DNA from: Selaginella moellendorffii
Lineage: Eukaryota; Plantae; Lycopodiophyta
Direction: 5' to 3'
DNA: 64,000 nt
Assembly (NCBI RefSeq): GCF_000143415.4
Contig: NW_003314391.1
Location: 1-64,000, forward strand
The notes beneath the pieces were generated by a model. The model ran no database searches. It saw only the letters and a list, made by a program, of their open reading frames with translations, and had not been told where the DNA came from. A program made the translations under genes and the position numbers. Positions within the stretch are counted from its first letter, which is position 1. Each line of letters starts with the position of its first letter. Positions 4,580-30,620 of the stretch are shown piece after piece.

Positions 4580-4582
4580 ATT

Positions 4583-4595: not shown

Positions 4596-4638
4596 TTCTC
4601 CTCAGTTCTAGCGAAGGATAGAGGCGGATTGCTGGGAG

Positions 4639-10961: not shown

Positions 10962-13900
10962 GGTGCATCTTCCCCATTTCTCAAGGAAGTCGGAGACGGT
11001 AAGACACTTTACCGATTCGTGCCTCAATCTCATAAGGCCCCACGAACCTGCTTAAGGAACTCAAGATCAATTCATTTATGGAATACATGCATTTTTACCT
11101 TTGGGTCAACTTTCGGCTGATCCCACTTGGTAGGCTGAGGTTCTTGCTGTTCAGCCACACCTTCTCCCCAGCTTGGAACTCTACATCCCAACGCTTCTGG
11201 TTCGCGTACTTGGTTTGCCTTTGTTGAGCTCGTTCCAAGGAATCCCTCACTAGATTCCAAATGTTGAGTCTTTCTGCCGTGAATGCCTCCACTGCGGGTA
11301 ACTCTCCATGATACTTGGCCACACCGAGCTCCACAGGACCTTCAATAGCTCGCCCATTGATGACTTCCCATGGACTCACCCCGATACTCAAATGTGGTGA
11401 ATTGTTATAATATATTTCCGCAAGTCCCAAATGACTTACCCAATCGGTCTGGTCTCCCGAGACATAGCATCGCAAATAATCCTCCAGCTGCCTATTCACC
11501 CTTTTTGTTTGTCTGTCTGTCAAGAAGTGTTAGTGCCATCAACTTGACTTAATACCCCATACCTATCTGTGGGTGATAGGCTGTGCTGAATTTCAACTTG
11601 GTGCGATACTGTTCCAAGAGGGTTCTCCAGAACCTACTGGTGAAGATTTTATCTCGATCTGAGATAATCTCTTCTGGTCTTCCCCGCACTCGAACCACTT
11701 GTTCGAAGAACAATTTCACCACCCCTTCCGCATCCACTTCCGTTGTGGTGGGTATGAAATGTGCCATCTTCGAAAATCGGTCCACCACCACGAATATCGC
11801 ATTGAACCCCTTGCTTGGGGGTAGTCCTGTGATGAAGTCCATCGTAAGACATTTCCACGGACGATCTGGAATTGGGATGCTTTGCAACAAGCCCCCACTA
11901 GCCTTAGTTATGGCTTTGACCTGCTGACATGTTAGACATGTCTTTACATAGTCTTGGACGTCCTTAGCCATATCTGGCCAATGATACTTCCTCTTGAGTA
12001 AGTCCATCGTCTTGGGCACTCCGCCGTGTCCCGCAAGAGGTCCATCATGACACTCTTCTAAGGCTACCTTCCTTAGTTCCCCTTCTGGAACATACACCCT
12101 CGTTTGCTTGTAATATATGTGTCCATTGCGTTCCGCATAGCCTGTTTTTTCTTCCGTTGGCAGCTCACCTCTCTGGTGAGCTTCCCGTGCCTCTTGATTC
12201 CTCAGCAACACTTCTTGTGCTAGACTGTCATTCTCGTATGCAGTCCGCACATCATCCCAAAAGGTTGCTGTCGTGCTGGATATCGCCAACTTCAAGCTCG
12301 CTTTTCGACTTAGCGCATCTGCCACGATGTTGCTCTTCCCAGGCTTGTACAGAATCTCGCAATCAAACTCGGCCAAAGCATTGGCCCACCGACCTTGTTT
12401 TCCCCTTAGGTCGGGCTGTGACAGGAAGTGTTTCGTTGCCACATTGTCCGTGTAAACCTTGAAGTGTCTCCCAAGGTAGTGTCGCCACTCCTTGAGTGCC
12501 TTGACCACCGCAAACAATTCCTTCTCATGGGCAGGCCACTTCTGTTGAGCCTTGTCCAACTTCTTCGAGAAGAACGCTACTGGATGGTTGTTTTGCTTCA
12601 AAACTACGCCCAACGCAAAGTCTGAAGCATCTGTTTCTACCTCAAAGTCCTTACCAAAGTCTGGTAATGCCAACACGGGAGCCTTCCTCAACTTTCCCTT
12701 GAGGTGAACGAATTCCGCCTCGCATTCCGCTGTCCATACCATCTTCCCTTTTCCCGTTTGGTCTGTTAAGGGCAGGGCTACTCTCGAATAGTGTCTGATA
12801 AACTTTCGATAGTAGTTGCATAGCCCCAAGAATGCCCTTAACTCGTGTACATTCGATGGTCGCTCCCAATCCTGGATCGCTTGGACCTTCTCAGGGTCCA
12901 CCTTGAGCCCATCCTTGCCCACCACATGCTCGAGAAACTTTACCTCTTGTTGAGCAAAGTCACATTTGCTCTCTTTAGCATACAGCTGGTGTTCCCTTAG
13001 TTTCTCAAACACCTTCATCAAGTGTTCGGCATGCTCCTCTAGCGTTTCGCTATAGATCAGGATGTCGTCAATATAGACGACCACAAAGTGATCCAGATAA
13101 GGTACAAAGATATGGTTCATCAACGCTGAAAACGTTGCCGGCGCATTGCATAGCCTGAAGGGCATCACCAGAAACTCGAAGCTCCCATACCTCATTCGAT
13201 AGGTTGTCTTCTTGACATCTTCCTCTACTACCCTGATCTGGTAGTATCCTGACCTTAGGTCAATCCTCGAGAAGTATTTTGCCTTTCCCAACCTATCGAA
13301 CAGGTCCTCAATCCTTGGCAAAGGGTACTTGTTCTTCTTGGTATACTTGTTGAGCAACCGGTAGTCTATGCACATGCGCATAGATCCATTTTTCTTTTTC
13401 ACAAATAGCACTGGCGCCCCATACGGCAACTTGCTCAACCTAACATACCCTTTGTCCACCAACTCCTCTAGTTGGTGCTTGAGCTCCGCAAGTTCTTTTC
13501 CATTCAAACGATAGGGGGGGCAAACCACTGCCTCAACACCCTCGACTAGCTCAATCTTATGTTCTATTGGTCGTGCGGGGGGCAACCCCGCCGGTAGCTC
13601 CTCTGGCATGGTATCCTGGAATTGATCTAACACTCGTTGGATCACTAAAGGTACTTCTTCCGTTCCAGTCTTTTTGTCACTTCTCACCGAGAGTAAGCAC
13701 AAAAATGCAGCCTTGGTCCCTTTAGTGAGTTGTCCTCTTGTGGACACCACATTCAGTCACGAATCTTTGGCCTTGCATTGCCCTACCTTTAGATCTTGGG
13801 CCTCCACCTTGGATCTTCTCCCTTGGGCATTCGCCAGTACCACAAGGTTCTTATCTTGTCCATGTAGGGCTACCACAAACCGATTGAACTAGTCTATCCC

Positions 13901-15436
13901 GAAGATCACGTCAAATCCCGCCATGTCCAACACGGTGAAGTCCATGTCTACTTTCGAAGTCCCTACTTCGACTCTCGCTTGTCGAAGTACCTCATCGGTG
14001 CTTTGGCTACCTTGAACAAACTCTATAGTTCTTGGTTCGCCTAGCCATTGCACCGTTAGTCTGGCTTGCCGGACTATGTCTACAGCCACAAAATTATTCG
14101 AAGCACCTGTGTCAATAAGGATATTAACAAAGCTACCCCCGAGCTTCCCTCGGAGGGCTAGTAGATGTCGCAAACGACTCTCTACCAAAATTGCTCGTGT
14201 AATGAGTAACTTTGAGCTAGGGACTGGATCACATACCTCAGTTTGGACTTCACCCGACTTAATGGCCATATTGGCTCTGGCCTTCTTCGGGTAGAGACAT
14301 TCCCTCGAAAAGTGTCCCGCTTCATCGCAGTTGTAGCATACGTTGTTTCCCACGCTGCTAAACGACTTGACCTTCTTATCCATGGGTTTGTCTCTTTTTG
14401 CTTGACTCCCCCACGTACTTGCTCGCTGGCCACCAGATTTGCCTTTCCGGAACCCTGAGGACTCATTCTTAGAGAAACTCTTCTTGAATTTCCCTTTGCT
14501 ATATGTTCCCCTTGGTTTGGCCCCTTTGCTAAACGTGGATTCCAACCCCGTCGCGTTCCCCTTTCGTAGGTTATCGTTGAAATGCACCTTGATGGCCACA
14601 TCCAACGCTTCCTTATAGTTGGTCGGGTTCCAGCGCATCACCTCACTGCGAGCCCAGGTTTGCAAACCTGATATGAAGGCATGGAATGCATCCATATCCC
14701 CCATGTCCATGACAAGTATCCTCTTTGCTATGAACCCATTCACATACTCCTGGATGGTTCTAGTCTGCTTCAGCCTACTCAGCTCATCTCTTAGATGCAG
14801 AGTGGCATTCGGAGGAACGTATGTTGCACGAATCCTCGCCTTCATCATATCCCAAGTGGCCACCGGTCCTTCGTTGGCCTCCGTTGTTCTCCACCAAGAC
14901 TTGGCATTATCTGTCAAGTATGGTTTTGCACATGGGACCTTCTCCGAGCTCGGTAATCGCAACGCTCGGAAGTATTCCTCCATATCGTAAAACCAATCCT
15001 CCACCACCTTATAGTCATTCACTCCCTTGAAGACCAGTGGGGGCTTTGGTTTGTACTTGGGAACTGTCTGAGGGACTGATTCTACTTCGGTCTGTTTGAC
15101 CTTGTTTGGTTCTGCTTCAGTCCCTGCCGAAGGGTCCGCACCTTCTGCGCTGCCAGCATCCGCAGTCTTTCACTTTTTCTTCCGCTTCTCGTCACGCTTT
15201 AGCTTGCGTACAAGAGTCTCCAGCAGGGCATTGGTCTGTGCCAACTGTCCTTCAAGCATGTCCAATCGAGCCTTGGACGACCGAACCTCGCTACTGGACT
15301 CCTGTTTGGAAGTTTCCTCACTAGAGTCCTCTTCATGCAAGGATTCCTCATCCATAGCCTCTCGTTCGACTGGAGGCTCCAACTCTGGAGGAGGTTCCGT
15401 CTCCACCTTGGTTTGCTTCCGCACTGCCTTTGCCAT
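10962..15436 (-). pseudogene. gag-pol of outer element (disrupted)
   Basis: ORFs 15170-15436, 13889-15022, 11549-13750, 11095-11523. Motifs [24 protein letters not shown], RNase H ETDASD, IN zinc finger and core. Frameshift and stop relative to the inner copy. Confidence 0.92.
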
Positions 15437-15495
15437 CTCCCAGCAATCTGCCTCTATCCTTCACTAGAACTGAGGAAAAAGCTTCGATACCAAAT

Positions 15496-16642
15496 TGTAA
15501 GCCATAAATTTTGACCTTTCCAATTTGCCAACTTACCTCGTCTATCCGTCCGACCCTGCCTTGGCTTTTGCTAAGTTCCCCCGCCAAGGTTCCCGCCTAT
15601 GGTACCAACTCCTACTTGGTCCTACTTGGTTTCAGCTACTCACTGCATGAGCAATGGAGTGTTAGCCATCCATCCACGGATTCCCAATCTCTCCCAATCC
15701 CCCTCCCCGGGTTAGACTGGATTTAAGGTTCGGCTACACTCCCCGCAGGCACAAGCAGCCAAGCACACCAAACCTCCAAGTTCCTAACACCCCTTGGTAC
15801 CACAAGACTTGATCATGGGACCCTCTAAATCCCAAGTCTTGGGTGCAACACTTGCTTCGGGATGCCGGGGCGAAACACCGTGGCCTAATGGCCTGGTATG
15901 GGTACCTCTACCCCCCCACTTCCATCCCGAAGGAAGGCCCAAGCCCCTAGGAGGGGCGAGGACCAATGAGCCACCTGGTACTCAAGTGGGGCACCACTCC
16001 ACATGAGCCGGGAACACCGCAGTCGGTTTCCCTTTCGGGAGTGGGAGCTGCTCTTGAGCACTTCCTTGGATGGACCCTCCGGCACCAACCAAGTCCATAC
16101 TCACTCCCACCCAAGGCCCCTTGGTCCCAGTCTCAACCTCAAGTCGGTTTGGAAGCCCCACTGGAGAGTCCTTTCAAAACTAGTTCTTGGACCTCACTAT
16201 CCCTACTATATTTTTGGAACCCCCTGCAGCCCCCCCCCCCCCCAGGAAACGCACACTTTGGGCTTTCACCCCTTGACCCGTATTAGTATTTGGACTCAGT
16301 CTCTGGCTCGATCTCGGACTCGATTTCGGATCTGACTTCGGATTCGGTCTCGGACTCGAGCTCGGACTCGATCTCGAACCCGATCTCGGACCCGACCTCG
16401 GACTCAACCTCGAACTCGGTCTCGGACCCGATTTTGGATCTCGGACTCCGTCTTAAACTCGGTCTCGAAGTCGGTCCCCGAGTCGGCCTCGGACTTGATT
16501 CCGGACTCTATCTCGAACTCGGTCTCATAGTCGGTCTTGGACTCGATCTTCGACTTGGTCCCATCCAATGAACTCTTTATCATTTGGTCATGCTTTCGGG
16601 GTTCCTTTAGCCTATGACACCTCGGCGAGTTGGTTCCTTACA
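15496..16642 (-). repeat. 5' LTR of outer gypsy element
   Basis: Adjacent to PBS; homologous to 1588-2725. Confidence 0.93.
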
Positions 16643-16724
16643 CTCCCATTAGCTGGGAGTAAACATCAGCACAATTATTCGCAAACTTGTAGTTAAAGAA
16701 ATAACCCCTTCATAGTTACCCCCC

Positions 16725-18415
16725 TATGAGACACAAAATCCCTAGGCCCTAAAGTGGAGCCGAAAGGGTGCCACGTGGTAGTGGCCGAAGCGAAAGCCAA
16801 ACAAGCGTAACACGTTTGGGCTAAAATCTCCAGCTTGAAAAGGTTGAGAGCGGCAGCGGAACTCTCAACGAAGTGCTCAAGGAACAAGCACGAAGTGAGC
16901 AATGAGTGAGTCTCTAGAAAAGGGACACAAGAGGATCCGAGATGGAGTCCGAGATGGACCCAAGATGGAGTCCGAGATGGACCCAAGGTGGAGTCCGAGA
17001 TGGACCCAAGATGGAGTTCGAGATGGAGTCTGAGATGGAGTCTGCGATGGACCCGAGATGGAGTCCGAGATGGACCTGAAATGAAGTTCGAGATGGAGTC
17101 CGAGATGGACCTGAGATGGACCTGAGATAGAGTCTGAGATGGAGTCCGAGATGGACCCGAGATGAACCCAAGACGGAGTCCGAGGTGGAGTCCAAGATGG
17201 ACCCGAGATGGAGTCCGAGATGGAGTCTGAGACAGAGTCCGAGATGGACCTAAGATGGAGTCCGAGATGGAGTCCGAGATGGACCTAAGATGGAGCCAAG
17301 ATGGAGTCCGAGATGGACCCGAGATGGAGTCCAAGATGGAACCGGGACCGAGACCAAGACCGAGACCGAGTCCGAGTCCAAAACCGGGACCAAGACCAAG
17401 TTCGAGTCTGAATACTAATACAAGCAGTTGGGTGAAAGCCCAAAGCTATCGTCCCCCAGAGGGTTCCAAAAGTATAGTAGGGAGAGTGTAGGGGTTGGAT
17501 CCTAGTGGAACCAGTTTGGCTAGGAAAGGCCAGTTTAGCCTAGGAAGGCCATACCCAGTGTTGGGTGATGAGCTGACCACTAGGAAGTCCAAGACTAAAG
17601 TGAATACGAACCGATAAGCAGGTAGCTTGGTGAAGTGTTCGAGAGCCGGCTCTAGTTCCCCCGAAGATCGAATGGTTGATGCTCCTAGTCCAAGTATGGG
17701 TGGCACTACCTACTTGGATACCAGGCGTGGCTCAACGGAACCTCGCTCTAAGCCCATAGCTAGAGCACCCAAAGGTGGAAGGTGGGTAGAGTACTTATGA
17801 GGCCCGCATAGGGCCACGATGTTCCGAAATATTGTCCCAAAGTCCCAGACTGTGGAAAGGAAGAGGAGTAGCCCTCTAGTGTGATGACCAAGGACACAAT
17901 CTCACGGTGAGGAAGTCCCAGAGGACCATGGGACTTAGTGGTTGGGCTTGTGGGCCTTGATCCAATGGCAGTGTTGGCAAGCACGACCATGGACAAAAAG
18001 GGACTTAGTGAGGACCGGAAAGGAGATATTAAGGAAGGCTATTCCCCATGTCTACGGGCATCCTAAGGATGCTAAGGAGTGGATCTGGGATGACCACTCA
18101 TGGACGGATGGCCCAGTCTTGGAGAGACAGGATTGCAATGCAAGTGGCATTGGACCACCGGTGTGACCGAGGTGAATGGGTATGGCCTAGCGTAACGGGT
18201 TGATATGTTGGTGGTACCTTGGAGTGTCGATCATGGGATCGGACACGTGGAGCACTTGGACCAAGTGCAAAGGTTGAGTGGCATGGATGCCATTTTCGGG
18301 GTGAGCAAGCCCCAAATCCTGAATTGGACTTATGGAGGTTGTGAATGAGACTCCTCCAAGTGGTTGGAGGTATGGTTAAGTGACTAAAGTAGAATAGAAA
18401 AATGAGTTGTTTACA
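16725..18415 (+). mobile_element. Solo LTR of a second gypsy family (12-mer GATGGAGTCCGA arrays)
   Basis: Starts TATGAGACACAAAATCC (TGTGAGAC in the 49567 copy), ends TTTACA. Near-TSD CCCCC/CTCCC. Orientation inferred from blocks shared with the inner LTR. Confidence 0.75.
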
Positions 18416-18671
18416 CTCCCTTTACACAACCCAACAACAGGTAATGGTATATCAAATATGAGTTAACTTAGTTTTATGAATGTGTAGGACTATAATTAAA
18501 TTTTCAAGTGTTAATACAAAAAAATAAACAAATTTAACAATAAGAGTGCCTTAGATAATTACAATATAACTCATTATCAACAAAACTACAATAATGTATG
18601 CAGTATTTGATTAAACAGTAACATTTTAAAATATTTTTGTTAACTACAAATATAGTTTATTAATACATAAT

Positions 18672-20211
18672 ATTATGACACAAAATCCCTAGGCCCCAAA
18701 GTGGAGCCAAAAGGGTGCCACGTAGTAGTGGCCAAAGCGAAAGCAAAACGAGCGTAACACGTTTGAACTTAAAGCTTCGACTTGAAAAGGTTGAGAGCGG
18801 GAGTGGAACTCCCAACAAAGTGCTCGAAGAACAAGCACGAAGTGAGCAATGAGCGAGGCTCCAAAAAGAGACCCAAAAAGACCAACACATGACACGTGGA
18901 AGTGTTCGAGAAGGAGTCCGAGATGGAGTTCGAGATGGACCTGAGATGGAGTCTGAGATGGAGTCCGAGATGGACCCGAGATGGAGTCTGAGGTGGACCT
19001 GAGAAGTCCGAGATGGAACCGAGACCGAGACGAAGACTGAGACTGAGACCGAGTCCGAGTCCAAAACCGGGACCAAGACCGAGTCCGAATCTGAATACTA
19101 ATATAGGCAGTTGGGTGAAAGCCCAAGCCCAAGCGATCTCCCCCAGGCGAGGGGGGGGGGGGGGGCTACGGGGGGCTTCCAAAAGTATAGTAGGGAGAGT
19201 ATGGAGGTTGGAGCCCAGTGGAACTAATTTGGCTAGGAAAGGCCAATTTGGCCCAGGAAGGCCATATCCAATGTTGGGTAATGAGTTAACCATTGGGAAG
19301 TCCAAGATTAGAGTGAATATGGACCAACAAGCGGGGTAGTTTGGTGAAGTGTTCAAAAGCCGGCTTTAGTTCCCCTGGGAGATTGAATGGTCAATGCTCC
19401 TAGTTTGCCTACTTGGATACCAAGTGTGGCTCAACAGAACCTCGCTCTAAACCCATGGCTAGAGCACCCAAAGGTGGAAGGCGGGGAGAATACCCATGAG
19501 GCCCGCATAGGGCCACGGTGTTCCGAAACGTTGTCCCAAAGGCCTAGACTATGGAAAGGAAGAGGAGTAGCCCTCTGGTGTGGTGACCAAGGACACAGTC
19601 ATATAGTGAGGAAGTCCTAGAGGACCATAGGACTTAGTGGTCGGGCCTGTGGGCCTTTATCCAGTAGTAGTGTTGGCGAGCACAGCTATGGACAAAAAGG
19701 GAATTGATAAGGACTAGAAAGGTGATATTGGGGAAGGCTATTCCCCATGCTTGTGAGCATCCTAAGGATGCTAAGGAGTGGATCTGGGATGACCACTCAT
19801 GGATGGATATCCCAGTCTTGGAGAGATAGGATTGCAATGCAGGTGGCATTGGACCACCAATGTGACCAAGGTGAATGGGCATAACCTACCGTAACGAGCT
19901 TGTATGTTAGTGGTACCTTGGGGTGTCGATCATGGGATCGGACATGTGGAGCACTTGGACTGTTAGGCACTAGGTCAAGATAATAGGATAAAGAAAGGGC
20001 CCTACAATGAAGTGATCACCCCTTTAGCCAGTTGGCTTAGGGTGTAAGGGATAGGATCCTAACATGGACCAAGTGCAAAGGTTGAGTGGCATAGATGCCA
20101 TTCTCAGGGCAAATAAGCCCCAAATCCGGAATTGGACTTATGGAGGTTGTGAACAAGACCCCTCCAAGTGGTCGGAAGTATGGTTAAGTGACTAAAGTAG
20201 AATGGCTTACA
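18672..20211 (+). mobile_element. LTR/LTR remnant of the same second family
   Basis: Colinear with 16725-18415 and ends GGCTTACA. Left end degraded; no TSD found. Confidence 0.7.
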
Positions 20212-20369
20212 TCGCTTATACTCCTCTGATAATTTTGCAGATGCCCTCCATAGATTCTTCATGACCATAACAAGCAACAACCAGTAGCACTAGCACCAAT
20301 GCCTTCCTCAAACAGCCCACAGCATCAGCATTCATACTATGCATCATGATCTCCCATCCATATTTGATA

Positions 20370-20549
20370 ATATATAGACTACAAATTAGGTCATATAAAA
20401 TACTTAGCCTTTAGAAGTTTGTCAAATAGGTCATCAATATGAGGTAGTAAATAACTAGTTTTTTACTATAATCTTCTTGAGAGCTTGACATATCCTTATG
20501 GTACCATCTTTTTTATAAACAAAAAGGACCGGTGCTTTATAAGTGGAGA
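20370..20549 (-). pseudogene. Degenerate gypsy RT fragment (insertion site of the DNA transposon; continues at 30007)
   Basis: Joining across the element gives GSPSISTYKAPVLFVYKKDGTIRIC...KN*..LPHIDDLFDKL, an RT N-terminal motif. Confidence 0.8.
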
Positions 20550-20992
20550 TAAGCTCTATTTCGTTAAAGTGGGAATTGTCATTATCCCACTTGTAAAATA
20601 AGGTTTCCAAACCTTTATATAGTATATAAATATAACAAAATTCAACTGCATTGAGGCACATGCCATTTTATTTTAAACAAGGAAATGTCTACTCAATCAC
20701 TTCTCCTCCCCCTGCCACTGCTTCACCTCTCTCTTCTCCTTGTCATCGTCGTCCAATTTCTTTCCATCCTTTTAATATTGGCTCAGTTGCTCCGAGTCTA
20801 GGTGGAGCCCAAGTCCCCATTCAATCTTTACTTTCCCCTTATTAATAAAACAACTTCGTAGACTTCCAATAACATGCTGTAACACTTCTAGTATAATGCA
20901 AATCCTCTCAAAGAATTGTCTTTTAATATTAATACAATGGCATGGAACCCCATGCCATAATAAGTTACATTTTTAAATAAATACATGCCATC

Positions 20993-23452
20993 TCAGACTG
21001 TTATTTTTTGCCTCCAACGCCTATACAATAATCTTGGAATTTCATCACTCTCCACACTATTAGGATTTAAACCCAATAGTAATGCCATCTCTTCTCTAAT
21101 ACGTCCACGCTCATGTTCAGTGGTCGAAGAACCCATCCGGTTGAGCAAATTATGGAGATGTGGATAGTGCTTGGCTAGACAATATACATGCCATAAATGA
21201 TGACTAGTGTCTGTCCAATCAAATGGCTTCTGATATACCGTTCCATCTGCCATTTGGTTGATTTCTGCAGCCACCTCCTGGACTGGCCGGTTCTCTATCA
21301 CCATCGCTCCAAGCCGTTTTGCAAGGTCCCCCAAAACATACGGTTTCTTCTCCCTAGTTTCCATACTGCAAGAGATGGGGTGCACTGCATATGTGTGCGT
21401 GTTCGCTGCAGTTTTAATCGGCGAGTCATCGATGATGAGGATTTCACTTGAACTAGCAGTCTGGTTCATCACTACAACCTCTAGCTTGACAAAGATGGGC
21501 TTGCTACCCCTCACATGGACCATAGTCAAGCAATCCTCCTGCGTTAGGAGAAAGTCAAATGGTAATATTACTCGCGTCTGATCGTGCATCATCTGTAGCA
21601 ACGTTAATGCATTGTGGCGCATCATGGATGTCCAAACTCCCAATTGCAAATTGAACCTGGCCCTCTGTTTTAAGTGTCGCATGGTCATTATTAGATCCCG
21701 CAGTTTCTCCCGTGTGATTAATGTGAATCTGTCTCTTTTGACCAACTCGATGAACTTGGGGGCCCCCTTCACGTACTCATCGATGTCTTCATTTGATAAA
21801 TCCAGCGCTTCCATCATCTCTTGCATGTTGTCGATGCTCACCCTCTCCACGGCCACTTGCTCGAAGATCCAATCCTTCAATAGCGCACGAGCTCTCAGAG
21901 TCGTGCACAAGTCCTCGTATGTCACAATATGGCCGGGAGTCATTTTGGTCTTGTTGAAGGCTACCTCACCACGTAGAAGAGCATTAGGCACTGTCAGAAG
22001 GTCGTCGTCGTCTAGAGACCGCGAGAAACGCAAGGCGTTGAGCTTCAAATCATTGGGCTTCCGGCCGTCCTCCACACCCATTGAGTTTGGCAACTCCCCG
22101 TCATGGTACCTCCTCAGCACATCTACCCATTTGTCAAAAACAACTTTTGTCGCGAGTAGAATGTTATGGATGCTGAGTGTGTCATTGACCCCCAGTGTTT
22201 TCGAGAGAAGACTCGAGAATTCCTACAATGGAAATGGCGTGAGGCCACATGCTATGCCACATGCAACGAGGCTTACCTGCCAGGCGCTAGTTGCTAGTGC
22301 ATGTCCTTGTCCTCGTTTTTGTGGCTTCTTCAGTTGAACCCAGAGCTTCCGTGTTCGTGCCAATGTCTCATGCAGACCCGATTTGTAGCACGTTTCTTGC
22401 TTGACATTCTGCGCGTGGGAGATGTATATGATAGATCGGAGGGGCGAGTTGCCTTTTATCAGGCGGACAACTCTTGTCTTGAAGACTTTCTTCACCTCCT
22501 CGCCCACCATAATATCCACAACTATCTCTTGCATCGCCAAACTAGAATGCTGCCCGGAGACGGCATAGAACCGGATGTTCTGATCGTCCAACACCTTCCT
22601 ATTGATCAAGTCTGGAAACCTCGTCTCGCCCTTCATTGTTCGGTAGTAGGGGATCACGTCTGCGATGTCGGGTGTTACTGGACTTGCCAGCATCTTCTGC
22701 TTCAGTTTCTCCACCCACTCATCAGATACTAGCCTGTGGTTGTATTTGCTTTGGATGTCGATACGGCTCACGTCGATTGTATATACTTTGTTGGAATAGT
22801 AACAAGTACTATTATCTGCGACGATTTTTGCTGCCTCTTCTTGCTCTTTCTGCTCTTTATGGCTCTTCTTTTTGGTGGGTGTAGTGTTCGAACCCGAGGC
22901 AATGGCATCACCGAGTAGCTTCTTTTTTGGAGGAGAGTCGGACGTCGGCTTGAGCTTGACCACCCTTTTCTGCTTCGGGGTAGTTTCCAAATCGACCCCC
23001 TTCCCCTTCGCTTTGCGAACTGGAGGCACTCTCAACGGCTCAATGTTGGAATATAGTTTTTGAACATCGCCGTAGGTGAGGTCCGTGGATTCCATGTGAT
23101 CTTCATAGACCCGCAGCGTCTTTGAAATTGTGGGCCTCCTGGACAACCTCTCCCTAGCTCCCTCTAGGAATTCCTCATAGCCGCTGCCCCCCTCCGGGAA
23201 GCCGCTAGGATGTGCAAGGTGGATCTTGAAGGCAGACGCTGTCTCTACCACAAGTGCCAGTCCATATTCTTGCATGGAACTGCATGGAGTGTCTGTCACT
23301 TGGATGAGGATCCCCATGCATTCTTTTCTCCCACCATCTGTGTTGTACAGCCTCAGATCCTCGCCTTCCATCCCGAAAGTCCAACTGGTGAGTTCCTTCC
23401 CCTTCTCTGCATCCACATTGACAGTGGCTGGAAGAAGAACGCAATTCCTCGC
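20993..23452 (-). CDS. Large (>=801 aa) transposon accessory protein with ParB/Sulfiredoxin-like domain; exons 23452-22277 and 22222-20993, further 5' exons likely
   Basis: Two long ORFs join in frame across a 54-nt GTAAGC..TAG intron (22223-22276). Segment IDVSRI..YNHRLVSDEWVEKLKQKMLASPVTPDIADVIP...RFYAVSGQHSSLAMQEI follows the ParB-N/Srx pattern. Preceded by a basic low-complexity linker (PKQKR, PPKKK, PTKKK). Confidence 0.7.
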
Positions 23453-24936
23453 CTGTTCAGAAATGCACAACAATTAGAGCTGACAGATGAAAAGCTAGCA
23501 GCTGGAAATAACGTGAGGCCACACGCCATTCACCACTGCATCAGATGTCTTGAGGCTGCATCCTAAGATGGCGTGAGGCTACACGCCATCTGTAACCGGA
23601 CTGCACTCGAGAGCCCAATCGGTGCATGCCAATGTTGCTACTGAATGGCATGTGGCCTCATGCCATTTTCTACTTGGCCTAAAAGACTTACCATTTGAAG
23701 CCGAATGGAGGCGTGACAACTGGACTCACTGGCGAATGTGCACTATGTGTGCAGCGGATCGTAGCAGCAAGGCTACTCTGCCACTTACAGTTGGAGAGTG
23801 GCGCTGAAATCTCCCGGGACGCCAAGTGGGCTGCGTGTGGGTGGCGGAGTGGGCGGCGGAGTTGGCGGCGAAGTTACAAACTGGGTGTGTCTTGAAGTGG
23901 ACGCCGATGCACACGAGCGCGATGCGAGCGCGAGTGTGATGCAAGCGCGAGTGGACACCGATGCACACGAGAAACCTGTAGAGAAGTGGGAGCGCGAGTG
24001 GGAGCACGATGCGAGCGCGAGTGTGCGAGCGCGAGTACGAAGCAAAATGCAAAACCTAACCTCACACGCGCGAAATGTCACGACGGTTGGTAATCCCGCC
24101 ACATCATCATTCCTCGAAGTTGGGCGCCACCATTAATTTCTGGTTCGGCGCGCGCATGCGTGAAATCCAAAAGAAATCCGCAACGTCATCATTCCTCGGA
24201 CTGCATGCACGCGAAATCCAAAAGAAAGATCATGATTGGGATATCATTTAATACCCTCGCTATATTTATACCATGCATGATTGGATATTCCAAAGCATCT
24301 TGTATTTCCAAAAATGCCAGATGTTCAGCTAAATAAATTGTCAGAGGATTTGATGTGACGTTCAAGCGTGTGGGCTCATGCAATTTTGATCCCAAAAAAT
24401 GCACCAAAAAATGCTCGGTGTCATCTGGCGTTATCTCTTGAATGGCGTGGGGCCGCATGCCATTTTCAGGAGCATATAGGAGGATATTCCTAGAATATTC
24501 TGACACACGCGAGATTGTTTTGAGTTTCCTGGAGATCCAACCGTTAGATCGCAACTAGATTTTACAGAATGGTATACAATGTCCTTCTTGATGACCCTGA
24601 AAAGAAGCATCTCGATCGGACACCACATGAGACCACACGAGCCTTACAATGTTTCAGGGGCATTTGCCATAGATCCGACCGTTATTTTGCTCCAAGATTC
24701 TACAGTTTGGTGTGCATTGACCTTTCCATCGACACTGCAAAGGGACATCACAATCAGATGCAGGATCACAAGAAACCAACTTCACTAACTCTGGTTTCAC
24801 CAAGATCTACGTAAGGAGTTATGAAATGAAAGGACCCTCTCTATTGAAATGTGTTTATGGTCCTAGGGGCATTGTGACATATCAAAGGATTTTGCATCAA
24901 GTTCTGTATTTGCGTGTTTATCAAGCTACTGAATTG

Positions 24937-24961
24937 CTAAACCCTAAACCCTAACCCTAAA
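24937..24961 (+). promoter_or_regulatory. Telo-box/short interstitial plant telomere repeat (CCCTAAA)~3
   Basis: CTAAACCCTAAACCCTAACCCTAAA between the two divergent transposon genes. Confidence 0.55.
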
Positions 24962-26247
24962 CATGTGGCAAATGCTGCGTGAAGAAAGATGCCCTTTCTG
25001 GGCAAATGCTATAAGAGGCAGATGCCGAGCAGATGTATCTCAGGCTAGCGAAGGGGACAAACGAAAGCTAGCTATAAACATGACGGGATGCAAATAGATT
25101 ACTAGGCTGGTCCTGCGAAAATCAAAAACCATAATTGAAAACATTGAAAATGCAAAAAGAAAGGTTTATAATATTTTTGAATTTTAAGCAACCAAAGGAA
25201 TGTAAGTAGGGCATGTGTTTGTAAGTTAAAAAATGCCTCAACCACTTAAATTCCCAAGTAAATAAAGCTGTTTCTATTTTTGGTACAGGTAAACTTTATA
25301 GCGTGTGGGCTCATGCAATTTTGAACCCAAAAATGCACCAAAAAATGCTCGACTAGCATTATTCTTTGAATGGCGTGTGGCCTTATATTGCCATAAATGG
25401 ACGTACACACACAGCATAATTATTCCTTTACACGGCGAATAATCTTGGCGTGGATCGCTGACATGGCATGGCAAAGTTCGAATCACTGACATGGCACAGC
25501 TGGATCGAGGCAAGGACATGATGTGACAAAGTTCAACCTCTGACAGCAAAGTCTAGAAGCTACTCAGTTTGAAATTTGTCAGAGGAATCATAAGATCTGG
25601 TTTGTCAGAGGATTTGATGTGACGTTCAAGCGTGTGTTATTTTTGAATTCTCGAACTCATTCCTAGGTCTATCATTTTTGTGCGCCGTGTTCTTGGTTCC
25701 GCTGAGCACAGTGAGCGCTGCTTGTGTAAGCGGCGTTGTGAGCTGTGGTTTATGCGTCTACAAGCGGTTGCGGCATTGCGAGCGCCATTGCGAGCGGCAG
25801 TTTATGCGAGTGGCAGTTTGTGTGAGCGGCGCTACGAGCAGTTGCGGTGTTGCGAGCGGCGCTACGAGTAGTTGCGGTGTTGCGAGCAGCACTGTCTTTG
25901 GTGTGGCTACCGCTTCCTCTTGATATTCGGCACTTGTGCTTCCTGGTATGTTCACCATGGAATGGTTTAGGACCACATTTAGAAATGGCATGAGGCCACA
26001 TGCCATCTTGGGCCCTTGCAATTTCATGGCTAGCGTATTGTCATGTATGTTTTTACTTGCCTGCAGCTGTGTGTATATCAAGATGGCATGAGGCCTCATG
26101 CCAATTTTGTGAATGCGAAATTTCACGTGGGTGTCAATAGCATGTTTGAATAATGGCATGTGGCCTCATGCTATTTGGTATGTTATGATTTAGGCCATTC
26201 TCCAATCATTTTTTGTATGGTCTTAACTTCTTTTCTACACTTTCAGA

Positions 26248-29200
26248 ATGGCCTTCAGGGTTGGGGAAAAGGTTTACATTTTGAATGGTGGGAAGAGAGT
26301 TGCAAAAGGGACCCTTGTGTCTATGGATCGGAACTTTGTTATACACTGTCAAAGGCTTGGGGAAGGCAATGCTGCTGTATCAGTAGAGACTGTCTTCGAT
26401 GGGAATGTGGTCGCTATTGAACGAGGAGAGATGGTCGTCGGGGTAAATGTTGTTGTTGCCTTGAAAAATCTGCAGAAGAAAGCAGATGTTGGGGACAGCG
26501 CAAGTGCGACGCATGTTCCCTCCGTGGATCTTAAGAACCGTGCTACATGGATTCAGGCAAAGGTGTTTCTAAACAACCCCGAGGGGGAGGTGGTAGCTGA
26601 GGGCTTAGCCACAGTTGTGGATCCAAGAGATGCGGTTGCTAATCAAGAATTGGGCTGGGATGATATTGGAGTTGCGATTTTAGAGGTTGTTGACACAGAA
26701 GAAAACAGTCTGACTATTGGAAGCATTGTGCGGTGGAAATTGAGGCATTTAGTGTTTGAGAATGTGAAGGATTCACAATCAAACACCACTACAACTGATG
26801 ACAGAACATCTTTTCATGGGAAAAGAAAGTACACCTTCCTACAGTGCAGCCAAAGGGATCTGAGCAACGAACCGAAAAGGCAGAAAATGGCGATGGAGGT
26901 TCGAATGGTCTCGACAGTTGCTTGTTGCAAGAGGAGGTGCTGTCAACATGCTGATTGGGATGCTATTGAAGAGGAGGGAGCAAGATACAAGACATTGTCC
27001 TGGAAGGCAGCTCGCAATTTTGTGTATGAGGCATTACGGTCATCTGTTGATGCTTCAGAACATCAGGTGGGGGGCATGGTCTTCCAGAGGGGTTTGGTCT
27101 GCATGAAGGCATGGAGAATCATTTATGGAGTCCCTCGAAGCACATTCTACAGAATCAAAACTGAGTTCGAGGAACAAAGGGTTCAACAGGCAGTCCATGG
27201 GAACGACGATACACACAAAACCAGGGGTCATGTTGTATATGGAGAGGCAATCTTCAAGAGGTTTGTCGAGACATGTAGCGAGCAGCAACCACATAAAACC
27301 CGCCTCTTGGAAGATGGAACACGAGACACCCAACGAGTTCTCCCTTCCATGTATACCAAGGGGGCCATATTGGAAGATGTGAATCGGGAACTCCAGAGTA
27401 ATGGCTATAGGAAGCTGAGCCAATCTAGATTTAGTAGATTGTGGAGCAACAGGTTTAGGGATGTGAGTATAGGAAAGTACTCCAGCTTTTCAAAGTGTGA
27501 CGAGTGCACTACTATCAAAATGGCTTTGTCGAAGAATTCTTGCAGCGCTCAAGAGCGAGAGACGTTGGTTAGAAGGCGGCTCAACCACAACATCGAGCAG
27601 AGAAGCTGCAGGACTGCATATTATCATAACAGGATTCTCTCCATGGAGAGACCTGACTCTTACCTCTGCATCATCCACGACAAAATGGACCAGAAAAAGA
27701 CGTGCTTACCTCGACTCAATCCTGCCCCCAAGGCAATCTCTTCATCCATGCAGCTGCCTGTGTCTCTATTTGGCATAATCGCTCATGGGCATGGTGCCCA
27801 GAACTATGGGAACTTCTTTGTACCTCTATGGGGTGGCGGGGGTGCAAACATGATGATTGCGTCCCTAGCAAAACACTTAAGGTCTCTGCAAAGTGCGCAG
27901 ACTGAGCTGAACGGCCAACCCTTGCATAAGGCCCTTGTCGATCGAACCCCATACAGGGTTCAGCTGGAGGAGGAGCAAAGGCTTGCAGTATCGCGTGGGG
28001 CCCCATGCCATCCCAGTGAATATGTTGGCCGTCAGATTGTAGGGTTATCACGTGAGGCCTCATGCCATTCCGACGAGGCTGGTCGCCCGGTGAATGCACA
28101 GCCTCATCCAAACGAAGCAGAATCTCAAGGAAGTTCTTGCGGCCGATGTGGCCTTCCACCCCATCTTCTGCTCCAAACAGACAATGCTGGCAGTGAGAAC
28201 AAAAACATGTACGTCTTCGTGTACTTGGCGATGCTTGTTGCCAAAGGCATATTTGAAACGGTTACACTTGGCTTTCTCATGGTTGGGCACACTCATGAAG
28301 ACGTCGATGCCATGTTCAGTCACCTGGCAGAGTCCCTCCGGCGATCCAATGTCCTCACCCTCCCACAACTCTACGATGAATTCCAAAATTGCATCAAAGG
28401 CACTGTTGAAGCTACACTTGTGACAGAGGTTCCAGACTTTAAGGGGTTTGTAAGAGGCTACATCAGGGACGGATCCGAAACGCTGATTGGCCACTCCAAG
28501 CCTCTTCAGTTTCATTTCAGCATGCGTGACGGTGCTCCAGTGATGAGGTACAAGATGAGAGAATGGGACACAGTGTGGCTGCCAGTGGATGGCATTGAAC
28601 TCTTCAAGAGAGATCCCATAACTGGGGAACCTATGATTCCTCAGGGTTCCCCACGGCCGATGCACCCGGATGGACTCAAAGACCAGGAAAGTATAGTGGC
28701 CGGGATTAGACAGCATATTGCCTTCTGGAAGAGGGGGTTGGTGTTTGGTGGAGAATCCTATTTTAAGAGGTGCAAGCCTTTGCTCGAATACTGGGAGAAG
28801 ATTATATCTGCTATCCAAAATGGGCCGGTTGTATATGAAGAATTGGAAGAGTCCTTTTGGCCAGAACCCAGAGCACCAGATAGTAGCGGAACAATGTCCT
28901 CTGGAAATGCAGTGACAGATAACGATGTTGAGGATCACTATTGTGGGCCGAGGAACAAGAAGCCGGATTCAGCATTCAATCCAGTACAGGTCTGCAAAGG
29001 AATGGTCGTGCTTGTTAGACCCAGTAATAAAAAACAAATGATATGGGTGGGGCGCTGCATCACTGATGCAGAGGAGGACGCAGAAACTAACTCCTTCAAT
29101 GTAACTGTGGAGTGGTTCAAGCCAAGTTCCGGATATACGAAGGATTGCCTAGAAAAGAGATGGGTGCTGAATCCAAGGGATCCCAGCATGAGCATATCGG

Positions 29201-29389
29201 TGGATAATGTTGTGCATGGTTGGATGCGGAAGCAGAGTGCCACCATCACCTTGCCAGACCATGCAAGAGATGTAGCAAGAGCATTCATAACCCGGGTTCA
29301 AGGTGAGATTCATTAATATTCCTTTACTAAGTTTCTAATGTATTTTATTTCAAGGTGAACAATCCGAATCTGAATCAGAGGAGGCGTGA
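26248..29389 (+). CDS. Putative DDD transposase (Sola-like, GHTHEDxD type), ~1030 aa; exons 26248-29302 and 29355-29389
   Basis: Intact 1022-codon ORF with C-rich CCKRRC/VCMKAW, HGN, KCDEC, HDKMDQKKT (D478), LQTDNAGSENKN (D645), FLMVGHTHEDVDAMFS (D685/687). Lies between TIRs. Short terminal exon GEQSESESEEA*. Confidence 0.82.
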
Positions 29390-30620
29390 TGGCATGTGGC
29401 CCTTTGCACTAGTATATCTTAATACCGGTCTGAGAAATAGAATGGCATGTGCCCTCAGGCCTTTTACTAAATCACCTTTGAAAGAAATGCAAGCCTCTAT
29501 GTCGTAAAAAAAAGGTACTAGAGAAATTCCTTAATAATATGAATGTTATTTAGTTTCATGAAAATACACTAAGGGTCAAATGAGTTAAATGACTTCTCCA
29601 GACTAGCAATGCCTCTTGCTACACCTTCACAATTAGATTCGTTAGAAAAAGATAACATTGAATAATATCTAAATGTTCTCACCATTAAGTTATATGTTTG
29701 GCTAATAGGAATGACGTTCATCTTGGAAAGCTCACCACACGCTCAATGAACAAAAAAATAGTGTGTGCGCGCATGCCATCGCTCTTCTTTAGCTTCAGAT
29801 TCGGCTTGTTCACCTTGACAATGAGATTTATTATACAACCAGATGGACTCAGTCTGGACACAAAGTCACCGCGCTAGTCACCATGCCCTAGACATGTCTA
29901 GCCCCTGGACAAAAAACATATAATTTCACGTCATTTTCAAATACTTGAAAATTTGTACTTAGTCCCATTTTACTGAATAAATCCCACTTTAACGAAATAG
30001 AGCTTAGATGGTGATCCCACAGTCAATCGAAATATTGAGTTGGATTTGATATAGTAGAGGTGACTGTAACCATTATTACTACACACACTTGTGATAAGAG
30101 AGACCAAAGGGCAGCAGCCCACATTTTTGTATTAGTCCCTATAGGACATTAGGAATGTATATACATGTTTCATTTATAAATAAATGAAATATCTGCAATA
30201 GAAAAATGTGATATAGCATCCTAAGGCAAGCAATTCCATAGGAAGGAGAGTATTTGGATGTGGTAGAAACCTTTTTTTTTTTGCTTAACTCTAAGATTCA
30301 ATGTTTCTTTACTTGTATGAAGTGATAATTTGAAGAACAAGAGAAAAATATAGTAAAAATCCCTAATGGATTTTATTAAAGGAGATAGAAAATTCTAGAG
30401 ATTAGATAATAGCTAGATCCCACCAAATAGAAATATTTTTCTAACATAATATTAAATTTTATTCATTATTTATTATTTAGTATTCTAGTGGTTTGTATTC
30501 TATTTGGTTTGTTTAAGCAAACTTCTAGTGGAGTGGGCTGGTAGTAGATATACCTAGTATGCTCTTGAATATTCTAGGATATTCTACCATGTAAGGGTTG
30601 TTATTCATTTAAATTAATTT

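What the first reader, a model, noticed from the sequence alone, without database searches (positions are those of the whole stretch)
20552..30004. Candidate new system: plant DNA transposon combining a DDD transposase, a ParB-like protein and an array of parS-like palindromes
Seen: a 9.45-kb element bounded by perfect 23-bp TIRs and TA duplications, with two intact divergent genes and ~18 copies of one 22-bp palindrome that I found only inside the element. Known: bacterial ParB (CTP-binding ParB/Srx fold) loads at short palindromic parS sites, and some prokaryotic mobile elements carry ParB-domain accessory genes. Inference: the element may encode a ParB/parS-like module that coats its own DNA, for transpososome assembly, end synapsis, anti-silencing (analogous to VANC binding repeated motifs in VANDAL elements) or autoregulation. 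I know of no described plant TE superfamily with this architecture.
Basis: partly seen in the sequence, partly recalled or inferred. Interest (0 to 1): 0.95.

Follow-up and report, generated by a model that had tools for sequence, protein, structure and literature searches.

The report
Sola1 transposon with ParB-like gene
This is an intact plant "jumping gene" of the known Sola1 type that carries a second gene with a bacterial ParB-like fold and about 17 copies of its own 22-letter palindrome; similar arrangements were reported in algae in 2025, so this is a new variant, not a new kind.

Summary
It spans 20551-30005 (9,455 bp). It has perfect 24-bp terminal inverted repeats and a 4-bp target-site duplication, AGAT, not TA.

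- **Transposase:** 26248-29316, Pfam DUF7869. It shares the DDD core of the published Ectocarpus Sola1-1 transposase, so this is Sola1, not a new superfamily.
- **Accessory gene:** it runs divergently from the transposase and encodes about 800 aa across at least two introns. It contains a domain whose AlphaFold model matches only ParB/Srx-fold proteins, followed by a degenerate NIF/FCP1-like phosphatase domain.
- **Palindrome:** 15-19 copies of a 22-bp palindrome lie only inside the element, and 17 of 19 are in non-coding parts.
- **Relatives:** five distant relatives each carry 12-38 copies of their own palindrome: Riccia, Ceratodon and three metagenome contigs. A ParB-like or NIF-like accessory gene was detected in three of them.

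The most likely mechanism, which is inferred, is that the accessory protein recognises the element's own palindromes and regulates the element's transcription or chromatin. Algal Sola1 and Plavaka elements with ParB-like accessory proteins, and inverted-repeat arrays in Plavaka, were published in 2025. This is therefore a new land-plant variant with a different effector domain. Binding has not been tested.

The parts
20547..20550 (.). Left copy of the 4-bp target-site duplication, AGAT
   Evidence: AGAT lies directly outside both termini.
20551..30005 (.). Whole Sola1-type DNA transposon, 9,455 bp
   Evidence: Terminal repeats, duplication, and a second deleted copy ending at the same right terminus with a different flank (L001).
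20551..20574 (+). Left terminal inverted repeat, 24 bp, AAGCTCTATTTCGTTAAAGTGGGA
   Evidence: exactly two perfect matches in the window, none in shuffles.
20993..22222 (-). Last exon of the accessory gene (409 aa plus stop). It holds a helical module that follows the ParB-like domain (aa 1-115) and a degenerate NIF/FCP1-like domain (aa about 181-326).
   Evidence: in-frame acceptor. (both modules found in L002, L005, L006, L008, L009). (NIF 19 bits here). (NIF 38-59 bits in relatives).
22223..22276 (-). 54-nt intron (GTAAGC...TTGTAG), made up largely of one palindrome copy
   Evidence: Homologues called by prokaryote-style gene finders end at the same point, '...WKV' then stop.
22277..23452 (-). 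Main exon of the accessory gene: conserved N-terminal region, lysine-rich linker and ParB/Srx domain
22277..22876 (-). ParB/Srx-fold domain (aa 200-399 of the ORF), with the motif F-AVSGQHS
   Evidence: AlphaFold2 model, pLDDT 76. Foldseek PDB top hit Noc 7ol9, E 6.7e-5, then ParB, PadC, KorB, Srx. BFVD.
23453..23691 (-). Putative first intron (GTAAGT...AACAG) holding four palindrome copies. The putative ATG lies just upstream at 23694-23692.
   Evidence: the ATG is directly followed by GTAAGT and the acceptor is in frame with the ORF. This is a model, not confirmed by RNA.
23695..26247 (.). Region between the two divergent genes, presumably a bidirectional promoter. It holds 7 palindrome copies; with the 4 in the adjacent putative intron, 11 of the 19 copies lie between 23508 and 26174.
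26248..29316 (+). Sola1 DDD transposase, 1,022 aa. Catalytic residues are inferred as D478 (27679-27681), D645 (28180-28182) and D687 (28306-28308). The N-terminal part has cysteine clusters.
   Evidence: Pfam DUF7869, E 5.5e-42. 64 homologues. Invariant columns. Core motif shared with Sola1-1_Ec32.
20937..20958 (.). Palindrome copy, 2 mismatches, 3' of the accessory gene
22234..22255 (.). Palindrome copy, 1 mismatch, inside the 54-nt intron
23508..23529 (.). Palindrome copy, 2 mismatches
23568..23589 (.). Palindrome copy, 1 mismatch
23645..23666 (.). Palindrome copy, 0 mismatches to the degenerate consensus
24442..24463 (.). Palindrome copy, 0 mismatches
25298..25319 (.). Palindrome copy, 3 mismatches
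25985..26006 (.). Palindrome copy, 0 mismatches
26083..26104 (.). Palindrome copy, 1 mismatch; kept in the deleted copy L001
26153..26174 (.). Palindrome copy, 1 mismatch; kept in L001
27990..28011 (.). Palindrome copy, 1 mismatch, inside the transposase ORF but in its length-variable linker (aa 581-588), or possibly in an intron
28047..28068 (.). Palindrome copy, 2 mismatches, in the same variable linker
29389..29410 (.). Palindrome copy, 4 mismatches, 3' of the transposase
29442..29463 (.). Palindrome copy, 3 mismatches
29758..29779 (.). Palindrome copy, 4 mismatches
29982..30005 (-). Right terminal inverted repeat, 24 bp
30006..30009 (.). Right copy of the 4-bp target-site duplication, AGAT

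Best explanation
Shown:
- This is an autonomous, apparently young Sola1-superfamily cut-and-paste transposon. It has a DDD transposase, 24-bp terminal repeats and a 4-bp duplication.
- It carries a divergently transcribed accessory gene of about 800 aa. The protein has a conserved N-terminal region, a basic linker, a ParB/Srx-fold domain, a short helical module and a degenerate NIF/FCP1-like (HAD phosphatase-like) domain.
- It carries 15-19 copies of an element-specific 22-bp palindrome in its introns, its ends and above all the region between the two genes.

Inferred:
- The palindromes are binding sites for a dimer of an element-encoded protein, most probably the ParB-like accessory protein. 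This would resemble KorB with its 12 operators on plasmid RK2, or Noc and ParB with their palindromic sites.
- Binding at many sites marks the element's own DNA and concentrates the NIF-like domain there. That domain lacks the second catalytic Asp in relatives and has no recognisable DxDxT motif in this copy, so it may only bind phosphoproteins such as the RNA polymerase II tail.
- The outcome is control of the element's two divergent promoters, or protection from host silencing. DNA partition is not the expected outcome, because no ParA partner is present.
For: Identity of the element:
- Pfam DUF7869, E 5.5e-42.
- Invariant HDKMD, DN..NKN and GHTHxDxD motifs.
- 27 of 54 identical residues across the core against the published Sola1-1_Ec32 transposase.
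- 4-bp duplications: AGAT here and CAAT in Ceratodon.

ParB/Srx fold.

Accessory gene architecture conserved across elements:
- In Riccia L006 a ParB-like ORF and then a NIF gene lie divergent from the transposase.
- In L008 a ParB-like ORF is followed by a NIF ORF.
- In L010 a ParB-like ORF lies divergent from the transposase.
- In Ceratodon L002 NIF-like ORFs lie divergent from the transposase.

Palindromes:
- All copies lie inside the element.
- 17 of 19 lie outside coding sequence, binomial P = 2e-5.
- Riccia has 38 inside and 0 outside. Ceratodon has 24 inside and 0 outside.
- Each of the six loci has its own motif.
- The terminal repeat does not resemble the palindrome, so end recognition by the transposase is a separate matter.

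Published parallel proposals for algal Sola1 and Plavaka elements.
Against: - No binding data exist.
- The ParB/Srx domain itself is not the DNA-reading part of ParB, and a helix-turn-helix was not shown. The model of the downstream exon had pLDDT 57 and its fold search was meaningless.
- The family has SGQHS where ParB has the CTP-binding GERRxR, so clamp behaviour is doubtful.
- Foldseek cannot separate the ParB CTPase type from the GmrSD-N/DndB type.
- L003 and L011 have palindrome arrays, but no ParB-like ORF was seen in the sequence at hand. Both are limited by the ends of the contig or locus.
- In Ceratodon the ParB-like domain was not detected.
- The transposase has N-terminal cysteine clusters and two DUF8039 repeats that could read a dyad instead.
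Confidence: 0.5

Rival explanations
1. The palindromes are internal and subterminal binding sites of the transposase itself, as with the repeated motifs of CACTA, Ac or Mutator elements. The ParB-like/NIF-like protein would then act in some other way, for example as an enzyme or through protein contacts.
For: - Every locus with a Sola1 transposase of this clade that could be read over several kb has a palindrome array. This includes L003 and L011, where no ParB-like ORF was found.
- The transposase has conserved N-terminal cysteine clusters and duplicated DUF8039 modules.
- Copies lie within 100-250 bp of both ends (20645, 29758).
Against: - Most copies are central, not terminal: 11 of 19 lie between the genes.
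- The terminal repeat shares no sequence with the palindrome.
- L003 and L011 are truncated on the side where the accessory gene would lie. L011 has a - strand gene that runs off the locus end just beyond one palindrome cluster.
- The clam transposase-like gene, which has no accessory gene, shows no dispersed palindrome, but this is a single locus and probably not a mobile copy.
Confidence: 0.25
2. The palindromes work mainly at the DNA or RNA level or through host factors. They could be promoter or enhancer motifs for host transcription factors, hairpins that feed small-RNA production, or spreading mini-satellites. No element-encoded reader would be involved.
For: - They cluster in the presumed bidirectional promoter.
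- In relatives they often sit in tandem units of 41-153 bp.
- They contain short restriction-like palindromes (CATG, GGCC).
Against: - Each element family has a different 19-24-bp motif. That pattern fits co-evolution with an element-encoded reader better than a conserved host factor.
- Copies are also kept in introns and 3' regions across the whole element. Dyad symmetry is preserved while the centre varies.
Confidence: 0.12
3. The ParB/Srx domain is an enzyme or nucleotide-dependent sensor of the GmrSD-N/DUF262 or DndB type (DGQHR/DGQQR motif). It would act on modified DNA or as a nuclease, not as a ParB-style site-specific clamp. The palindromes could still be its substrates.
For: - The motif SGQHS resembles DGQHR/DGQQR more than GERRxR. 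This comparison rests on my own knowledge of those families.
- The best BFVD hit is a GmrSD N-terminal domain protein, and DndB-like proteins also appear.
- Algal counterparts are fused to DNA-modifying enzymes.
Against: - No Pfam, NCBIfam or PDB sequence match to any of these families.
- The top PDB fold hits are the CTPase clade: Noc, ParB, PadC, KorB.
- No nuclease or methylase domain was found in this protein.
Confidence: 0.13

Closest known systems
Sola1 superfamily of eukaryotic DNA transposons, specifically Sola1-1_Ec32 of Ectocarpus (PMC12477816)
   Same: - The DDD transposase shares the core '...DN..ENKN.Y....TVTL.F.MVGHTH..xD..FS'.
- 4-bp target-site duplication (supplement 3).
- Terminal inverted repeats.
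- An accessory gene with a ParB-like domain on the strand opposite the transposase.
   Different: - The Ectocarpus protein couples ParB-like to a DNA methyltransferase. Here the partner is a NIF/FCP1-like domain, and no methyltransferase was found.
- The Ectocarpus element is 21.5 kb with 282-bp imperfect terminal repeats. This one is 9.5 kb with 24-bp perfect repeats.
- The passages of that paper I read do not mention palindrome arrays.
Plavaka (CACTA-like) giant transposons of the red alga Bostrychia moritziana, accessory protein PAG3 (preprint 10.1101/2025.02.11.637652)
   Same: - An accessory protein with an N-terminal ParB-like domain fused to another domain.
- Arrays of inverted repeats inside the element.
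- The authors' proposal that the protein binds its own transposon.
   Different: - A different transposase superfamily (Plavaka/CMC, not Sola1).
- The partner domain is a 2OG-dependent oxygenase.
- The repeats are described as tandem arrays next to the PAG3 gene. Here they are spread over the whole element, including introns.
Bacterial ParB-family site-specific DNA clamps with multiple palindromic sites (ParB/parS, Noc/NBS, KorB/OB of plasmid RK2)
   Same: - ParB/Srx fold: 7ol9, 6sdk, 7bm8, 8qa9.
- Many copies of a short palindrome on the replicon that encodes the protein.
- Sites concentrated near promoters, as with KorB. The KorB comparison rests on my own knowledge.
   Different: - No sequence-level match.
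- SGQHS in place of GERRxR.
- No ParA partner.
- Eukaryotic nuclear setting, spliced gene and a fused NIF-like domain.
VANC anti-silencing proteins of Arabidopsis VANDAL (Mutator-like) elements
   Same: An element-encoded accessory protein thought to recognise short motifs repeated within its own element family.
   Different: An unrelated protein fold and superfamily. The VANC motifs are not long palindromes. No evidence here bears on methylation.

Membership tests
Sola1 DNA transposons | Transposase homologous to reference Sola1 transposases | tested here: met
   Compared by eye with the Sola1-1_Ec32 protein printed in supplement 2 of PMC12477816. 27 of 54 residues are identical across the block that holds the 2nd and 3rd catalytic Asp. 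The upstream CC..C, 'VC..A...', 'MP(H/N)' and 'F..C..C' blocks appear in the same order. No formal alignment was run, because that would have required typing the sequence.
Sola1 DNA transposons | DDD catalytic triad | tested here: met
   D478, D645 and D687 are invariant in 14 homologues and are the acidic residues also kept in Sola1-1_Ec32.
Sola1 DNA transposons | 4-bp target-site duplication | tested here: met
   AGAT/AGAT here. CAAT/CAAT in the Ceratodon element. The Riccia element is compatible with TATA but ambiguous. Sola1-1_Ec32 is listed with a 4-bp duplication.
Sola1 DNA transposons | Terminal inverted repeats | tested here: met
   24-bp perfect repeats found only at the two ends.
ParB/Srx superfamily (fold level) | ParB/Srx alpha/beta fold | tested here: met
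   AlphaFold2 on a 12-sequence alignment, pLDDT 76.4. All top 50 PDB matches and nearly all named BFVD matches belong to this superfamily. Best E-values are 6.7e-5 and 5.5e-5, and TM-scores are only 0.3-0.47.
Canonical ParB CTPase clamps (ParB, Noc, KorB) | Arginine-rich nucleotide-binding motif GERRxR | tested here: not met
   The conserved motif at the corresponding strand-helix junction is F-A(I/V)SGQHS--A. No Arg lies in the motif. Two other invariant Arg residues exist (R135, R176 of alignment A2), and their role is unknown.
Canonical ParB CTPase clamps (ParB, Noc, KorB) | Helix-turn-helix DNA-binding domain after the N-terminal domain | tested here: inconclusive
   A conserved helical module follows the domain in five loci. 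The model of that exon has pLDDT 57 and its fold search gave only noise.
Canonical ParB CTPase clamps (ParB, Noc, KorB) | Specific binding to a palindromic site; CTP binding and hydrolysis | not testable with these tools
   Palindromes are present and element-specific. Binding and nucleotide use need experiments.
ParABS partition systems | Partner ParA ATPase encoded alongside | tested here: not met
   Only two genes lie in the element. No Pfam hit to a ParA-type ATPase in any of its ORFs.
ParB-like accessory proteins of algal giant DNA transposons (Sola1-1_Ec32; Plavaka PAG3) | ParB-like domain fused to a second, enzyme-type domain and encoded inside a DNA transposon beside the transposase | tested here: met
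   ParB/Srx domain plus NIF-like domain in one spliced gene, divergent from the transposase. The partner domain differs from the published methyltransferase and oxygenase.
ParB-like accessory proteins of algal giant DNA transposons (Sola1-1_Ec32; Plavaka PAG3) | Arrays of inverted repeats within the same element | tested here: met
   15-19 copies here and 12-38 in five relatives.
NIF / FCP1-SCP-like HAD phosphatases (Pfam PF03031) | Match to the family profile above the curated cut-off | tested here: inconclusive
   The window protein scores 19.0 bits against a cut-off of 21.8, E 0.0012, and covers only part of the profile. The homologous domain in relatives passes: 59, 50.8, 42.5 and 38.5 bits.
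NIF / FCP1-SCP-like HAD phosphatases (Pfam PF03031) | Catalytic DxDx(T/V) motif | tested here: not met
   Relatives have D-x-N or D-x-K (IIIDLNGVL, LVLDINDLL, LVLDIKGLL). The window protein has no Asp at the position I aligned by eye (FIELVKRDRF). The domain is therefore probably not a standard phosphatase.

The most novel reading that the evidence does not exclude
A working ParB/parS-type module in a land-plant nucleus. The accessory protein would load as a nucleotide-gated dimer at about 17 element-specific palindromes and spread over or bridge the whole transposon. It would also tether a CTD-phosphatase-like domain that tunes RNA polymerase II, IV or V activity on the element. That would give the transposon sequence-specific control of its own chromatin, for example autoregulation or escape from silencing.
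Probability: 0.2. Interest if true: 0.85.

Novelty: new variant of a known kind. Interest (0 to 1): 0.6.

Why it matters
If the accessory protein reads the palindromes, this is a compact and testable case of a eukaryotic transposon recognising its own DNA with a module of bacterial origin. Six element families each carry their own motif, which amounts to a natural set of matched protein and site pairs.

It extends observations made in brown and red algae in 2025 to land plants. It also shows that the ParB-like 'address' domain has been combined with yet another effector: NIF/FCP1-like here, against a methyltransferase or 2OG oxygenase in algae. That pattern suggests a modular 'targeting domain plus effector' design in transposon accessory genes.

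It also gives Pfam DUF7869 a superfamily assignment, Sola1.

Tried and rejected
1. TA duplication and a Tc1/mariner-like reading. Rejected because the flanks read AGAT/AGAT.
2. Sequence-level identification of the accessory protein. Pfam, NCBIfam and PDB searches were blank, both with the single sequence and with a profile.
3. Word-indexed homologue searches with the ParB-like ORF and with the last exon found nothing. Only the exhaustive phmmer run gave 12 weak hits.
4. Structure of the last exon. The model had pLDDT 57, and its Foldseek hits (DnaB, RIG-I) are noise and were discarded.
5. A methyltransferase in the relatives. A stretch of the middle ORF of L008 looked to me like an N6/N4-methylase SAM motif, but Pfam and PDB searches gave nothing. 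This idea was dropped.
6. More copies of the element or of the ParB-like domain in public collections. The terminal-repeat scan of metagenome contigs found 0. Searches with the ParB-like alignment in metagenome and viral contigs found 0 confirmed hits. The genome-contig scan could not be run because no block was conserved enough.
7. An intron around the two palindromes inside the transposase ORF. A 55-nt GT..AG segment resembles the 54-nt accessory intron but would break the frame. An in-frame 132-nt alternative exists. This could not be resolved without RNA data.
8. Literature on DUF7869, PF25273 or DUF8039: none found. The Yuan & Wessler 2011 paper and the journal version of the Bostrychia paper are not held in the library.
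9. An animal comparison. The sponge protein could not be located. The clam locus is a multi-intron gene, probably not a mobile copy, so it says little.
10. Rfam scan of the window: no matches.

Full report
**1. What is in the sequence**

The inverted repeat found by the repeat tool covers 20550-20577 and 29979-30006. Reading the ends directly and checking by script shows the following.
- The element's termini are AAGCT...AGCTT.
- The perfect terminal inverted repeat is 24 bp, AAGCTCTATTTCGTTAAAGTGGGA. It occurs exactly twice in the window and never in shuffles.
- The four bases outside each end are AGAT.

The element therefore spans 20551-30005 (9,455 bp) with a 4-bp target-site duplication. 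The last T of the left AGAT and the first A of the right AGAT extend the apparent inverted repeat by one base on each side.

A second copy from another sequencing sample is 97% identical and has internal deletions (L001, Logan ERR10900155). It ends at the same right terminus and is followed by a different flank, AAAG. This supports the boundary and recent activity.

**2. The palindrome**

With the degenerate consensus ATGGCRTGNGGCCNCAYGCCAT, the counts are as follows.

| Mismatches allowed | Copies inside the element | Copies in the other 54.5 kb | Shuffles of the element |
|---|---|---|---|
| 4 or fewer | 15 | 0 | 0 |
| 6 or fewer | 19 | 1 | up to 0.4 |

- Seventeen of the 19 copies lie outside the ORFs, although ORFs make up 58% of the element (binomial P = 2e-5).
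- The other two (27990, 28047) fall in a stretch of the transposase that varies in length among homologues. That stretch could also be an intron.
- Eleven copies lie between the two genes.
- One copy fills most of a 54-nt intron.
- The rest lie near the two ends.

**3. The transposase**

- The 1,022-aa ORF at 26248-29316 matches Pfam DUF7869 (E 5.5e-42).
- It has 64 homologues in the word-indexed search. Among them are proteins from the moss Ceratodon purpureus, a sponge and a clam.
- Fourteen aligned homologues share invariant IIHDKMD, LQxDN....NKN and VGHTHxDxDA.F blocks, plus N-terminal cysteine clusters.
- No paper mentions DUF7869.
- The supplement of Dinatale et al. 2025 (PMC12477816) prints the curated Sola1-1_Ec32 transposase of Ectocarpus. 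Its core reads '...VQVDNTVAENKNNYLMGILAAMVGRGIMRTVTLCFMMVGHTHIQIDQIFS...'. The window has '...LQTDNAGSENKNMYVFVYLAMLVAKGIFETVTLGFLMVGHTHEDVDAMFS...'. That is 27 of 54 identical residues by my count, and the upstream blocks come in the same order.
- The acidic residues kept in both proteins are D478, D645 and D687, which form a DDD triad.
- That supplement lists a 4-bp duplication for Sola1-1_Ec32 and gives its best match as Repbase Sola1-1_PPa, a moss element.
- The Ceratodon relative of the window element also has a clean 4-bp duplication, CAAT.

The element is therefore a Sola1 transposon, not a new superfamily and not a TA-inserting one.

**4. The accessory gene**

The two - strand ORFs are one gene.
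- The first ORF ends at a CAG|GTAAGC donor at 22277/22276. An in-frame acceptor, TTGTAG|G, lies 54 nt downstream.
- Several homologues predicted by prokaryote-style gene callers stop at exactly this point.
- Upstream, an ATG directly followed by GTAAGT (23694-23686) and an in-frame acceptor at 23453/23452 suggest a first intron of 239 nt holding four palindromes. This is a model only.
- The product would be about 800 aa.

Searches on the first ORF gave the following.
- Nothing in Pfam, NCBIfam or the PDB by sequence, and nothing in the word-indexed search.
- The exhaustive phmmer search gave 12 weak hits, E 5e-9 to 7e-4. Eleven of them cover some part of residues 145-403. The twelfth (P0067, a yeast protein) matched only residues 78-152 and was left out of the alignments.
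- Two of the hits come from the liverwort Riccia sorocarpa.
- The aligned domain has a conserved F-A(I/V)SGQHS--A motif.

An AlphaFold2 model built on that alignment has pLDDT 76.4.
- In the PDB it matches only ParB/Srx-fold proteins: Noc 7ol9 (E 6.7e-5), ParB 6sdk and 7bm8, PadC, KorB, sulfiredoxin and SbnI.
- In BFVD it matches GmrSD-N, ParB, ParB-methylase and DndB-like proteins.
- TM-scores are modest at 0.3-0.47, so the fold assignment is sound but the subfamily is open.
- The arginine-rich CTP motif of ParB is absent.

The last exon holds two conserved modules.
- A helical module always follows the ParB-like domain (L005, L006, L008, L009).
- A NIF/FCP1-like domain scores below the Pfam cut-off here (19 bits) but clearly passes in relatives at 38-59 bits.
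- The catalytic DxDxT motif reads D-x-N or D-x-K in the relatives. I could not recognise it in the window protein.

**5. Do the parts travel together?**

| Locus | Transposase | Accessory gene | Palindrome |
|---|---|---|---|
| Riccia L006 | - strand, 3825-6794 | ParB-like gene (+, 10001-12182), then NIF-like gene (12533-16372) | CTTCGGGACGCGTCCCGAAG: 38 inside the candidate element, 0 outside |
| Ceratodon L002 | + strand | Two NIF-like ORFs divergent from the transposase; ParB-like domain not detected | CGTCGGCGGNCNGCCGACG: 24 inside, 0 outside |
| L010 (metagenome) | present | ParB-like ORF divergent from the transposase | GGTATCGTCGnnnCGACGATACC: 12 copies |
| L003 | present | None detected in the sequence at hand; both loci end on the relevant side | 24 copies of its own palindrome |
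| L011 | present | None detected, as for L003 | 15 copies of its own palindrome |
| L008 | not in contig | ParB-like ORF followed by a NIF ORF | not applicable |

Palindrome arrays are thus a trait of this Sola1 clade, and each family has its own motif. The ParB-like/NIF-like gene accompanies them wherever enough sequence is available to judge. The sample is small.

**6. Mechanism**

Shown: the anatomy described above.

Inferred:
- A palindrome of 19-24 bp that differs between families implies a dimeric reader that co-evolves with it, and so one encoded by the element.
- The terminal repeat is unrelated to the palindrome. The ParB family is the archetype of proteins that bind multi-copy palindromes on their own replicon.
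The transposase is the main rival (about 0.25).
- The sites are concentrated between the divergent genes, no ParA is present, and a probably non-catalytic CTD-phosphatase-like domain is attached. I therefore expect the output to be control of the element's own transcription or chromatin, not DNA partition.

**7. Comparison with the literature**

- Dinatale et al. [quoted passage not shown] - The Bostrychia preprint describes Plavaka PAG3, a ParB-like plus 2OG-oxygenase protein. [quoted passage not shown]

New here, as far as the searchable literature shows:
- the land-plant (bryophyte-type) setting;
- the NIF-like partner domain;
- palindromes dispersed through introns and both ends;
- family-specific motifs in six elements;
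- the link between DUF7869 and Sola1.

**8. Verdict**

The feature is real and well defined. It is a new variant of a known kind. Interest is moderate to high because it offers a clean, testable system, but it is not categorically new.

Noticed in passing
window 44986-50406 and 58511-64000: Two segments of about 5.4 kb are 99% identical. Each holds a degenerate remnant of a ParB-like domain (46182-46714; 59707-60302) and of the helical module that follows it (45956-46153; 59481-59678). No transposase lies nearby. These are probably relics of a related accessory gene, duplicated with their surroundings.
   Followed up: partly
window 1587-16646: Two Ty3/Gypsy LTR retrotransposon copies, about 93% identical, lie in opposite orientation. 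Their LTR-like repeats are at 1588-2730, 3432-4579, 9814-10961 and 15496-16646. One has an intact 1,295-aa gag-pol ORF at 4639-8526.
   Followed up: partly
window 16727-17443, 18662-19126, 49793-50026, 63387-63620: Blocks of a short tandem repeat (satellite-like, 75-87% identity between blocks) recur at four places. Two of them lie inside the duplicated segments.
   Followed up: no
window 52687-53589 (-) and 53974-54963 (-): Two ordinary-looking host ORFs. One is a plant-type O-methyltransferase (Methyltransf_2 plus dimerisation domain). The other is an NAD-dependent epimerase/dehydratase-family protein of 329 aa.
   Followed up: partly
window 41409-42007, 43207-43306, 44838-44937, 48663-48843, 60049-60148: Runs of N, which are assembly gaps or masked stretches. 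One interrupts the second ParB-like remnant.
   Followed up: no
window 27988-28042: A 55-nt GT...AG segment inside the transposase ORF contains a palindrome and ends in ...ATTGTAG. This closely resembles the 54-nt intron of the accessory gene (...CATTGTAG). On its own it would shift the reading frame. Palindrome-bearing mini-introns may be a feature of this element.
   Followed up: partly
window 23896-24054 and 25729-25898; 24338-24417 vs 25293-25351 and 25602-25636: Other short direct repeats lie in the region between the two genes. They include GCGAGCGCGAGTG-type units and a duplicated 35-80-bp block next to palindrome copies. Their meaning is unknown.
   Followed up: no
L010 6216-9116 and 14997-18880: Two Sola1 transposase copies lie in the same orientation within 19 kb of one metagenome contig. 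Palindromes of the same family lie next to both.
   Followed up: no
L012 (Mya arenaria CP111027.1, gene at 10001-24486): The clam DUF7869 protein is encoded by a 14.5-kb multi-intron gene with no accessory gene or palindrome array nearby. It may be a domesticated or decayed Sola1 transposase.
   Followed up: no
L008 2162-3955: The ORF between the ParB-like and NIF-like ORFs contains a stretch (VLDAYSGGYAM...GRRAI) that resembled an N6/N4 DNA-methylase SAM-binding motif by eye. Pfam and PDB sequence searches did not support this.
   Followed up: yes
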